A stretch of 64,000 nt of DNA from Selaginella moellendorffii (GCF_000143415.4 NW_003314319.1:524365-588364), one strand, 5' to 3'; shown: positions 942 through 2,130, counted from the first letter of the stretch. Notes: a model not told the origin generated them from the letters alone. A program made the numbers and translations.

Positions 942-2130
942 TCAAGCAGCTTGAGATGCAGGTGGAGTGAAATAGATTGTAGGTGGGGACAATGAAAATG
1001 GTGCTTTTGGTTTGGGCCATACAAGCTGTGAAGATTCTGTCAAGAAAAAGCATGTAGTAAAACTGAAAGAAAAAATAAGGATATCTGCATCAAATATCAT
1101 GTCATCCAGAGGTTGATCATACAGCTCCAGAACGTCCTTGAGCTTGGGAGCATCTTCGGCCAAAATAACTGCGAGGAATTTTAGCCAGAGTCAGGGAAAC
1201 TACTACTTACTTCCACTTATAACTCCGGCATCATCGGGGAGAAGCTCTTCGGCAGCTGTCCGGACAGAATCGAGTGAAACCAATCTTTGTTCCTGAGCAA
1301 ACCAAAAAAAATCAATCCACAAAGAAAAAGCATCGGAAAAATAGAAAAGGAGCGTACCTCGTCCATTTCCGATAGCTGCCTTCCCCATTTCAGCATATTA
1401 ACATTCAGCTCGGAGACCTGGAGAGAAACGCCAACGTCTCTCACGAATCCGATGGTTTGCCACAACATACCGCTGTAAGTAGGCTGTTTTTCGGATGAGG
1501 ATCGTAAGGTCCCATGTTTGACGAGTTTATAAACCCCGTCATCCAGCTCGTGAAAGAACGGTATGGCACCTGGACAGTTCTAAAAGAGAAAAACCATAAG
1601 TTTCTACAGAAGGATAGCTAGAACTTGAGCCTCACATCTTCCGTGAAGGAGAGAAGGCAAACTGAATCGAGGTGCCGGGTGTCAGCATGCAAATTCTTGA
1701 GAAGTTGCATCAAGATCACGGTCTCGGCCTGTGGATCAAAGATCTGAATCGAGAAAGAAAAAGAAAAATCTCTACCTCGACCAAATGTAGGCAACAGGTC
1801 GGATAGATTAGAAGAAAGCCAGAGACTTTGTCGAGTTTGCCAGCGATCTTGTGGAGCATTTCCTGGTGATAATCTGCGAAAGAAAGGAGATATATTTGGA
1901 GTGAAAAGAATCTATTCGACTACTTGTCATTCGCTCCTTGTCCGTCTCCTTGACCGCTCTCCCAGCGTACATCATCCGGCTGATCACAAGCTTCTTGACC
2001 TGATTGATCCAAGATTTCCCAGTGGATTCGATCGATTTATAGATGCGATTACCTTGGCATTGAGAGGATTCTCTTCGAGCCGCTGGTCTAGCAAGCTCAC
2101 GCGCGTCATATGCATCACGTAGTCGTCCAT
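942..2130 (-). CDS. TEX47: TEX47/MOT7/DYBLUP-like BLUF-fold axonemal (dynein tether-associated) protein, ~250 aa, ~9 exons
   Basis: Manual splicing gives MDDYVMHMTRVSLLDQRLEENPLNAK|VKKLVISRMMYAGR...|YHQEMLHKIAGKLDKVSGFLLIYPTCCLHLVE|AETVILMQLL...LLSFTED|VPYRSFTSWM...|VSELNVNMLKWG...|...ELLPDD...|APKLKDVLELYDQPLDDMIFDAE|LVWPKP. This matches recalled TEX47 motifs (TGLLLIYPTSILHILE, IPMRLFMQW, MYNKPIHVTLDSEVVWP) in the same order and at similar length. Confidence 0.8.
1028..1084 (-). other. U12-type (minor spliceosome) AT-AC intron, 57 nt
   Basis: 5' site ATATCCTT, branch-point-like TTTCTTGAC 11 nt from the 3' end, terminal AC. Removing it restores the family motif DAELVWP. Confidence 0.85.

What the first reader, a model, noticed from the sequence alone, without database searches (positions are those of the whole stretch)
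942..2130. BLUF-fold dynein-tether protein (DYBLUP/MOT7/TEX47-like) hidden in tiny exons of a land plant
Seen: a ~9-exon, ~250-aa gene that the ORF track fragments, with RMMYAGR, SGFLLIYPTCCLHLVE and EDVPYRSFTSW lining up with the BLUF signature (RLxYxS..TGxLL....FxQxLEG..RxFxxW). The BLUF Tyr is kept, but the catalytic Gln position is His. Established (from recall): DYBLUP/MOT7 associates with the f/I1 inner-arm dynein tether and modulates blue-light responses of cilia. Inference: the flagellated sperm of this plant may retain a BLUF-fold axonemal component, a fold outside the standard land-plant photoreceptor set.
Basis: partly seen in the sequence, partly recalled or inferred. Interest (0 to 1): 0.8.

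Follow-up and report, generated by a model that had tools for sequence, protein, structure and literature searches.

The report
Second spikemoss sperm dynein-tether gene (TEX47/MOT7)
This is a real, intact and apparently unannotated nine-exon gene of the spikemoss Selaginella moellendorffii for a second copy of the TEX47/MOT7 protein. That protein is a BLUF-fold part of the tether that holds a flagellar inner-arm dynein, so it is an expected sperm-flagellum component and not a convincing new plant light sensor.

Summary
On the minus strand, 2130-942, lies a 9-exon, 251-codon gene. Seven introns are GT-AG (42-66 nt) and one is a 57-nt AT-AC (U12-type) intron. All three quoted motifs are present.

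Exon 3 alone passes Pfam TEX47 (PF24787) and hits Chlamydomonas MOT7 (8glv_D9) and bovine TEX47. Land-plant orthologues align collinearly to every exon.

The window is Selaginella moellendorffii. Its gene is a second paralogue ("B"), 64% identical to the annotated SELMODRAFT_406029 ("A"). Synonymous sites are saturated, dN is 0.24, and all 13 plant-invariant residues are kept. No protein like B turned up in the protein collection.

The AT-AC intron sits at the same place in Marchantia, Diphasiastrum and Ceratopteris. It is lost in paralogue A and read through in several public gene models.

The BLUF fold is supported: the model of paralogue A matches MOT7, TEX47, then AppA, PixD and PAC. The photoactive Gln is His across the family (Cys or Val in liverworts), and published MOT7 binds flavin only weakly, so light sensing is unsupported.

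No spliced RNA was seen, but sampling was thin.

The scan found this family before on other DNA of this genome (s1-402807, s1-421117). Those notes fit paralogue A.

The joined protein was not sent to any search or fold tool.

The parts
2053..2130 (-). Exon 1 (ATG 2130-2128), 26 codons
   Evidence: GT donor at 2052. 62% identical to the start of Selaginella paralogue A and 55% to Diphasiastrum.
1924..1999 (-). Exon 2. Holds RMMYAGR; the Tyr codon at 1969-1967 matches the conserved BLUF strand-1 Tyr. An alternative in-frame acceptor 6 nt downstream (AAG|AAG) would remove 2 residues and match the spacing in paralogue A.
   Evidence: The Tyr column is invariant in 9 plant orthologues.
1776..1873 (-). 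Exon 3. Holds SGFLLIYPTCCLHLVE; the His codon at 1787-1785 sits at the BLUF Gln position.
   Evidence: This exon alone scores 27.4 bits on Pfam PF24787 TEX47 (cut-off 25, E 3e-6). It hits 8glv_D9 and 9fqr_H0 in PDB. It finds 6 plant orthologues among 1.84 billion representatives.
1636..1728 (-). Exon 4 (helix 2 and strand 4 of the BLUF core)
   Evidence: Collinear tblastn hits of P0002, P0004 and P0008.
1471..1569 (-). Exon 5. Holds VPYRSFTSWM; Trp codon 1545-1543, Met codon 1542-1540.
   Evidence: The R, F and W columns are invariant in plants.
1358..1417 (-). Exon 6 (NMLKWGRQLSEMD, the most conserved C-terminal helix)
   Evidence: 79-81% identical to Selaginella A and Marchantia.
1211..1292 (-). 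Exon 7
1085..1168 (-). Exon 8
1028..1084 (-). Intron 8, U12-type AT-AC, 57 nt. The 5' end is ATATCCTT. The branch-like site TTCTTGAC lies 11-12 nt before the terminal AC.
   Evidence: There is no GT donor here. Orthologues lack these 19 codons. ATATCCTT occurs only twice in the 64 kb on both strands. An AT-AC intron sits at the same codon in Marchantia, Diphasiastrum and Ceratopteris. No RNA junction is available.
942..1027 (-). Exon 9 (LVWPKP motif, 18-residue tail, stop TGA 944-942)
   Evidence: The VWP motif aligns with the C-terminal ends of MOT7 and TEX47.

Best explanation
The locus is a functional protein-coding gene of Selaginella moellendorffii. It encodes a second, anciently duplicated paralogue ('B') of the TEX47/MOT7 (DYBLUP) family: an N-terminal BLUF-fold domain followed by a helical C-terminal half that ends in a VWP motif. 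By homology (inferred, not shown here), the protein is made during spermatogenesis. It would sit at the centre of the FAP43/FAP44 tether/tether-head complex of the biflagellate sperm axoneme, touching the beta motor of the two-headed inner-arm dynein f/I1 and so helping to restrain or tune that dynein. The BLUF domain most likely acts as a structural or ligand/redox-responsive module and not as a classical blue-light switch. The gene keeps the ancestral exon structure, including a conserved AT-AC U12 intron, which is probably why gene callers missed it.
For: Shown here:
- The ORF is intact across 9 exons with consensus splice signals.
- Exon 3 passes Pfam TEX47 and hits MOT7 (8glv_D9) and TEX47 (9fqr_H0).
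- Every exon aligns collinearly with orthologues from Selaginella A, Diphasiastrum, Ceratopteris and Marchantia.
- A profile of those plant orthologues matches MOT7 over its full length at E 2e-30 and bovine TEX47 at E 9e-21.
- All 13 invariant columns and 59 of 69 columns conserved at 80% or more in plants are kept.
- Against paralogue A, dN is 0.24 while synonymous sites are saturated (pS 0.78), and the B branch is no longer than the A branch.
- The AF2 model of paralogue A has beta-alpha-beta-beta-alpha-beta topology. Its Foldseek ranking is MOT7, a Leishmania axoneme chain, TEX47, then AppA, PixD, PAC and BlrB.
- Named relatives come only from plants with swimming sperm.

From the literature:
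- MOT7 sits at the centre of the tether/tether-head stellate (PMC10266980).
- TEX47 is a sperm-specific tether subunit that touches the f-beta linker (PMC11779644).
- All flagellate land plants keep the I1 heavy chains DHC1 and DHC10, and IC138 and IC140 are reported in all land plants surveyed except Ginkgo, conifers and angiosperms (PMC9237703).
Against: No transcript evidence was found. Two low-depth contigs over the gene are unspliced, and two raw RNA-seq runs gave no reads. However, only about 12% of each run was read, and the expressed neighbour reached a depth of only about 2. The gene seems absent from the public protein sets. Localisation, partners and timing of expression are all inferred from distant organisms. 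At 57 nt, intron 8 is short for a U12 intron, and it is in frame, so a 270-aa form with the intron retained cannot be excluded. The fold was tested on the paralogue, not on this protein itself.
Confidence: 0.8

Rival explanations
1. It is a genuine flavin-based blue-light (BLUF) photoreceptor that lets spikemoss sperm adjust I1 dynein activity to light, as proposed for Chlamydomonas DYBLUP/MOT7.
For: The BLUF fold is real for the family, and the strand-1 Tyr and strand-5 Trp are kept. The Chlamydomonas mot7 mutant shows altered acclimation to strong blue light (PMC7909887).
Against: The photoactive Gln is His here, in MOT7 and in TEX47. It is Cys in Marchantia and Val in Calypogeia, so the position is not conserved even within plants. 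The Met that follows the Trp in BLUF (WxM) is displaced (WM). The authors of PMC7909887 found only weak FAD/FMN binding by MOT7 and say flavins are 'unlikely to be an intrinsic ligand'. [quoted passage not shown] Only one of six plant orthologues passes the Pfam BLUF cut-off.
Confidence: 0.07
2. It is a silent or recently dead duplicate, with paralogue A doing the job and this copy an unexpressed relic.
For: No spliced RNA was found. No annotated protein was found. A second, annotated paralogue exists in the same genome.
Against: There is no stop or frameshift in 756 nt, and all eight introns keep their splice signals, including the rare AT-AC set. All family-invariant residues are retained. 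dN is far below the saturated dS against A, and the branch shows no acceleration. An old pseudogene would not look like this; only a very recent silencing fits.
Confidence: 0.1
3. The 57-nt segment 1084-1028 is not an intron but a translated in-frame insertion, giving a 270-aa protein with a 19-residue hydrophobic insert.
For: The length is a multiple of three with no stop inside. It is short for a U12 intron. There is no RNA junction.
Against: An exact ATATCCTT lies at the boundary, a TCCTTRAY-like branch site sits at the right distance, and the segment ends in AC. An AT-AC intron is present at the identical codon in three other plant lineages, and no orthologue has residues there. The segment is 28% GC against 49% for the CDS.
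Confidence: 0.08

Closest known systems
Chlamydomonas reinhardtii MOT7 / DYBLUP (PDB 8glv chain D9, 238 aa)
   Same: Same family. The plant profile matches it end to end (E 2e-30). It is the best structural match of the paralogue model. It shares the GFLL.YP..-H-.-E core and the C-terminal VWP motif, and it also has His at the BLUF Gln position.
   Different: Sequence identity is only about 25-30%. The role in the tether and the blue-light acclimation phenotype are shown for the alga, not for any land plant.
Mammalian TEX47 (C7orf62; PDB 9fqr chain H0)
   Same: Same Pfam family, PF24787. It is a sperm-specific tether/tether-head subunit and has the same two-part architecture (PMC11779644).
   Different: It is an animal protein and more divergent (profile E 9e-21).
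Selaginella moellendorffii SELMODRAFT_406029 / 428126 (paralogue A, two haplotypes)
   Same: Same genome and same family, 64% identical, with the same first seven intron positions.
   Different: It lies at a different locus with different neighbours. It has lost the AT-AC intron, so it has 8 exons. Its public 436-aa model runs past the natural stop. The window gene keeps the ancestral 9-exon structure and was not found among annotated proteins.
Bacterial and euglenid BLUF photoreceptors (AppA, PixD/Slr1694, BlrB, bPAC/OaPAC; Pfam PF04940)
   Same: Same ferredoxin-like BLUF fold. For AppA 1yrx the rmsd is 2.9 A over 102 columns against the paralogue model. The Tyr and Trp are conserved.
   Different: The photoactive Gln is replaced by His and the Met is displaced. 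Sequence similarity is below threshold (E 0.2-0.7). There is an extra helical C-terminal half. No photocycle has been shown for any TEX47/MOT7 member.
Leishmania LAX28-type homologues (9y6s chain 7M is the structural hit)
   Same: It is an axonemal 96-nm-repeat protein and the second-best structural match. LAX28 is described as a DYBLUP homologue needed for I1 and tether assembly (bioRxiv 10.1101/782888; PMC7909887).
   Different: It is reported to lack a recognisable BLUF sequence signature. I did not verify that 9y6s_7M is LAX28.

Membership tests
TEX47/MOT7 (DYBLUP) family, Pfam PF24787 | Score above the Pfam gathering cut-off | tested here: met
   Exon 3 alone scores 27.4 bits against a cut-off of 25, E 3e-6. 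The other exons are too short to score. The joined protein was not scanned.
TEX47/MOT7 (DYBLUP) family, Pfam PF24787 | Full-length collinear similarity to established members (BLUF-like N-half, helical C-half, terminal VWP motif) | tested here: met
   All 9 exons align in order with plant members that score 55-93 bits on PF24787. The plant profile matches MOT7 residues 14-233 and TEX47 residues 23-249. LVWPKP is present in exon 9.
TEX47/MOT7 (DYBLUP) family, Pfam PF24787 | Occurs in organisms with motile cilia that have I1/f dynein | tested here: met
   The window is S. moellendorffii. Named relatives are found only in liverworts, Sphagnum, lycophytes and ferns. PMC9237703 reports I1 heavy chains in all flagellate land plants. 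The absence from seed plants rests on searches of limited sensitivity.
TEX47/MOT7 (DYBLUP) family, Pfam PF24787 | Subunit of the FAP43/FAP44 tether/tether-head complex in the axoneme | not testable with these tools
   Known only for Chlamydomonas and mammals (PMC10266980, PMC11779644).
BLUF domain (PF04940) photoreceptors | beta-alpha-beta-beta-alpha-beta-beta ferredoxin-like fold | tested here: met
   Tested on the 64%-identical paralogue A, not on the window protein. The AF2 core has pLDDT of about 80-89. Foldseek hits AppA, PixD, BlrB and PACs at E 2e-5 to 3e-4.
BLUF domain (PF04940) photoreceptors | Pfam BLUF score above cut-off | tested here: inconclusive
   The window's exons give no BLUF hit when scanned singly. 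Of the plant orthologues, only Ceratopteris passes (29.1 against 25); the others score 13-23 bits or do not hit.
BLUF domain (PF04940) photoreceptors | Conserved electron-donor Tyr on strand 1 | tested here: met
   The Tyr of RMMYAGR (codon 1969-1967) is invariant in plants. The Pfam BLUF match of the Ceratopteris orthologue starts at profile position 3 and covers this strand. The exact column equivalence is from my recollection of the profile.
BLUF domain (PF04940) photoreceptors | Photoactive Gln on strand 3 | tested here: not met
   It is His (codon 1787-1785), aligned opposite OaPAC Gln48. MOT7 and TEX47 also have His; Marchantia has Cys and Calypogeia has Val.
BLUF domain (PF04940) photoreceptors | Trp-x-Met on strand 5 | tested here: inconclusive
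   The Trp is kept. The Met follows directly (WM) instead of two positions on, and Thr occupies the Met column of OaPAC.
BLUF domain (PF04940) photoreceptors | Flavin binding and a light-induced spectral shift | not testable with these tools
   PMC7909887 reports only weak binding of FAD/FMN by MOT7.
U12-type AT-AC intron (intron 8) | 5' site ATATCCTT, branch site TCCTTRAY 10-15 nt from the 3' end, terminal AC | tested here: met
   ATATCCTT is exact. TTCTTGAC has one mismatch and lies 11-12 nt before the terminal AC. The motif occurs twice in the window.
U12-type AT-AC intron (intron 8) | Conserved position in orthologues | tested here: met
   An AT-AC intron interrupts the same codon in Marchantia L002, Diphasiastrum L003 and Ceratopteris L004.
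U12-type AT-AC intron (intron 8) | Spliced junction seen in RNA | tested here: inconclusive
   No reads cover it.

The most novel reading that the evidence does not exclude
Spikemoss sperm carry two anciently diverged TEX47/MOT7 tether subunits. One or both would use the BLUF pocket (with His instead of Gln) to sense a flavin-derived or redox ligand, or even light. That would give land-plant sperm a dynein-level steering input independent of the known photoreceptors, perhaps with the two paralogues assigned to the two unequal flagella.
Probability: 0.06. Interest if true: 0.8.

Novelty: new member of a known kind. Interest (0 to 1): 0.35.

Why it matters
It adds a part to the little-known parts list of land-plant sperm flagella. 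It shows that the I1-dynein tether module (TEX47/MOT7) was retained from algae through bryophytes, lycophytes and ferns, a distribution that the paper defining DYBLUP did not report. In practice it flags a gene that the public protein sets searched here appear to lack. It also gives a reason: a conserved AT-AC U12 intron that several published plant gene models read through or skip. Finally, it tempers the idea of a 'new plant photoreceptor', because the residue needed for BLUF photochemistry is missing across the family.

Tried and rejected
- Exons 1, 2 and 4-8 gave nothing meaningful against Pfam when scanned singly, and exons 2, 4, 5 and 8 gave nothing meaningful against PDB. They are too short.
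- The ESM Atlas feature search with exon 3 gave no usable hit.
- RNA evidence: only unspliced low-depth contigs in X1 and X2, and no reads in X3 and X4. This neither supports nor refutes the model.
- My first model had 8 exons and 270 aa. I rejected it after finding the AT-AC intron.
- I listed GT-AG alternatives inside the last exon. None fits the orthologues.
- Searches of our findings by sequence came back blank.
- Literature searches for the gene identifiers found nothing.
- I could not reach the allelic copy on the other haplotype, because no exact annotated neighbour lies within 10 kb.
- Tools received single exons by reference or database orthologues only. Exons were joined only inside scripts, for the frame check, identity, dN/dS, tree and conservation count.

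Full report
**What is in the sequence**

Reading the minus strand from 2130 down to 942 gives a series of short open segments bounded by GT and AG. These segments join into one frame. My first model had 8 exons and 270 codons.

The last 'exon' contained a T-rich, intron-like stretch with no GT donor. That stretch starts with ATATCCTT, the exact 5' consensus of U12-type AT-AC introns. It also has TTCTTGAC (consensus TCCTTRAY) 11-12 nt before a terminal AC. Removing these 57 nt (1084-1028) keeps the frame.

The final model has 9 exons, 756 nt and 251 aa. Introns 1-7 are 42-66 nt long with GT..AG ends. The introns are 28-51% GC, against 49% for the CDS.

Key codons are Tyr at 1969-1967, His at 1787-1785 and Trp at 1545-1543.

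**Identity**

- Exon 3 (32 aa) alone scores 27.4 bits on Pfam PF24787 'TEX47', above the cut-off of 25 (E 3e-6).
- Its best PDB matches are 8glv chain D9 and bovine TEX47, 9fqr_H0. 8glv_D9 is the 238-aa 'inner-arm dynein f/I1 light chain' of the Chlamydomonas 96-nm repeat, which I take to be MOT7 (the entry does not use that name).
- The other exons are too short to score alone.
- The same exon, run against 1.84 billion cluster representatives, returned seven proteins at E<=1e-3. Six are PF24787 proteins.
- The source records name five of the six: Selaginella moellendorffii, Diphasiastrum complanatum, Ceratopteris richardii, Adiantum nelumboides and Marchantia polymorpha. The sixth is an unnamed metagenome protein.
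- A profile of these orthologues found further members in Adiantum capillus-veneris, Calypogeia fissa and two Sphagnum species. It found no seed-plant protein.
- In tblastn, the orthologues hit the window only at 990-2130 on the minus strand. The hits are in order, cover every exon, and have alignment gaps exactly at the predicted introns, including the 19-codon gap at intron 8. Summed E-values run from 1e-23 to 5e-50.
- The plant profile matches MOT7 over residues 14-233 (E 2e-30) and TEX47 over residues 23-249 (E 9e-21).

**Which genome, and which copy**

A 416-aa ORF elsewhere in the window (52385-53632) is present letter for letter in the collection. Its 90% cluster mates are named S-adenosylmethionine decarboxylase of Selaginella moellendorffii. 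The window is therefore from that species.

The annotated Selaginella TEX47-family protein is not this gene. That protein is SELMODRAFT_406029, with a haplotype twin, SELMODRAFT_428126. Three observations separate the two genes:

- It lies on another scaffold, among different neighbours: peroxidase, aldo-keto reductase and glutaredoxin.
- It is only 64% identical to the window's protein.
- It has 8 exons, because the AT-AC intron is precisely absent there.

I call the annotated gene paralogue A and the window's gene paralogue B. In a maximum-likelihood tree, A and B are sisters with moderate support (80/88). They lie inside the vascular-plant group, beside Diphasiastrum, and their branches are about equally long. 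The duplication therefore looks old and lineage-specific.

Between A and B the proportion of synonymous differences is 0.78, which is saturated, while dN is 0.24. B keeps all 13 columns that are invariant in nine plant orthologues. It also keeps 59 of the 69 columns conserved at 80% or more, and the changes are mostly conservative. This is the signature of a gene under long-term constraint, not of a relic.

No protein like B, of 138-439 aa, appeared in the profile search of the collection. B therefore seems to be unannotated. I could not do the exact look-up of the joined protein.

**The AT-AC intron**

An AT-AC intron splits the same codon in three other lineages:

- Marchantia: G|ATATCCTC ... 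TTCTTAAC ... AC|
- Diphasiastrum: G|ATATCCTT ... ATCCTAAAC ... AC|
- Ceratopteris: G|ATATCCTT ... TTCCTTGAT ... AC|

Intron lengths there are about 155-240 nt. Several public models (both Adiantum species, Calypogeia and a metagenome protein) instead run on as '..D/N-I-L..'. That is the translation of GATATCCTT, so these models read into this intron.

ATATCCTT occurs only twice in the 64 kb window, counting both strands. One copy falling exactly on the alignment gap is therefore not chance.

The intron looks ancestral to land plants. It is kept in Selaginella B and lost cleanly in A. Because it is 57 nt long and in frame, a form with the intron retained cannot be excluded without RNA.

**Fold and the photoreceptor question**

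I could not fold the window's own joined protein, so I folded paralogue A (residues 1-232) with a 9-row plant alignment.

- Mean pLDDT is 67, and the core from residue 30 to 115 is at about 80-89.
- The topology is strand-helix-strand-strand-helix-strand, followed by four helices.
- Foldseek ranks MOT7 first (E 1e-11, TM 0.66). A chain of the Leishmania 96-nm repeat and bovine TEX47 follow.
- After those come only genuine BLUF proteins: AppA, PixD/Slr1694, TePixD, BlrB, BlrP1, bPAC and OaPAC, at E 2e-5 to 3e-4.

At the sequence level, one orthologue (Ceratopteris) passes the Pfam BLUF cut-off (29.1 against 25). The others fall below it.

So the BLUF fold is real. The chemistry, however, is not that of a BLUF sensor:

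- In the profile alignment to OaPAC, the family's His lies opposite the photoactive Gln48.
- MOT7 and TEX47 have the same His. Marchantia has Cys and Calypogeia has Val at this position.
- The Met two residues after the Trp is displaced.
- The paper that named DYBLUP reports only weak FAD/FMN binding by MOT7. It says flavins are unlikely to be the intrinsic ligand and finds it hard to tie the protein to light responses outside the alga (PMC7909887).

**Likely role**

The following comes from the literature:

- MOT7 fills the centre of the FAP43/FAP44 tether/tether-head stellate that anchors inner-arm dynein f/I1 (PMC10266980).
- TEX47 is the sperm-specific subunit of the same complex and touches the linker of the f-beta motor (PMC11779644).
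- All land plants with swimming sperm keep the two I1 heavy chains, and IC138 and IC140 are reported in all land plants surveyed except Ginkgo, conifers and angiosperms. Outer arms are gone (PMC9237703).

The inference is that paralogue B, like A, is a tether subunit of the Selaginella sperm axoneme. Nothing here shows when it is expressed, where it localises or what it binds.

**RNA**

No listed run is on record as holding the locus as RNA. I laid four runs on 850-2450.

- Two small contig sets each gave one low-depth contig over the gene: 1613-1848 and 1365-1605, both at depth 2.3. Both run straight through introns, so they are genomic DNA or unprocessed RNA.
- Two raw RNA-seq runs gave no read on the gene. 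Only about 12% of each run was read, and the expressed neighbour reached a depth of only about 2.

The test is uninformative. It is compatible with sperm-restricted expression.

**Relation to earlier notes of this scan**

Two notes on other pieces of this genome describe a BLUF-fold MOT7/TEX47 gene of 1124 and 1126 letters (s1-402807 and s1-421117). A follow-up on the first called it an intact 8-exon gene and an expected flagellar part. That length and exon number fit paralogue A: ATG to natural stop is 1126 nt in L001.

So the scan has seen this family before on other DNA, and my verdict on function agrees. What is added here is the distinct second paralogue and the AT-AC intron.

**Novelty and score**

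The family, its fold and its place in the axoneme are known. Land-plant members already sit in public databases under automatic names, though the DYBLUP paper did not list them. What is new:

- an apparently unannotated second Selaginella copy;
- an old duplication with both copies constrained;
- a conserved U12 intron that misleads annotation.

I rate it a new member of a known kind, of modest interest.

**Left out**

Exons were joined only inside scripts, for the frame check, identity, dN/dS, tree and conservation counts.

Noticed in passing
L001:10001-11816 (S. moellendorffii GL377569.1, SELMODRAFT_406029): The public 436-aa model of paralogue A looks over-extended. The reading frame reaches a natural stop right after the family's C-terminal VWP motif (...LVWPKPQLPYKLH*), giving about 236 aa. 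The model splices past that stop into about 200 unrelated residues.
   Followed up: partly
P0012, P0013, P0015, P0020 (Adiantum, Calypogeia, metagenome models); L002-L004: Several public gene models of this family read into the conserved AT-AC intron. Their tails start D/N-I-L, the translation of GATATCCTT, and so have wrong C-termini. The Marchantia, Diphasiastrum (237 aa) and Ceratopteris models splice it correctly.
   Followed up: partly
window:2251-2774 (minus strand): The upstream neighbour is a single-ORF gene (2774-2427) for a 115-aa signal-peptide-like, Cys- and Arg-rich acidic-tailed protein with no Pfam match. It is expressed (contig depth 24-51) and has an intron in its 3' UTR at about 2355-2431. 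Its transcript ends only about 120 nt before the ATG of the TEX47-like gene. This exact protein is not in the collection.
   Followed up: partly
window:2882-7460 (minus strand): Long multi-exon gene with HEAT repeats and a weak Cnd1 (condensin subunit 1 / CAP-D-like) signal (24.8 bits, just under the cut-off).
   Followed up: no
window:60-560: About 500 nt of (ACATATAT)n and (AT)n microsatellite at about 13% GC, directly downstream of the gene's stop. The window also contains a run of 100 N somewhere.
   Followed up: no
one search hit list: No Physcomitrium patens protein appeared among the family hits, although Sphagnum, liverworts, lycophytes and ferns did. This could be a loss, a missed annotation (the AT-AC intron again) or limited search sensitivity.
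   Followed up: no
P0007 (200 aa, source unknown): This protein is made of three near-identical repeats, each carrying the SGFLLIYP..HMLE core of TEX47. It looks like a tandem-repeat or assembly artefact of a TEX47-like exon.
   Followed up: no
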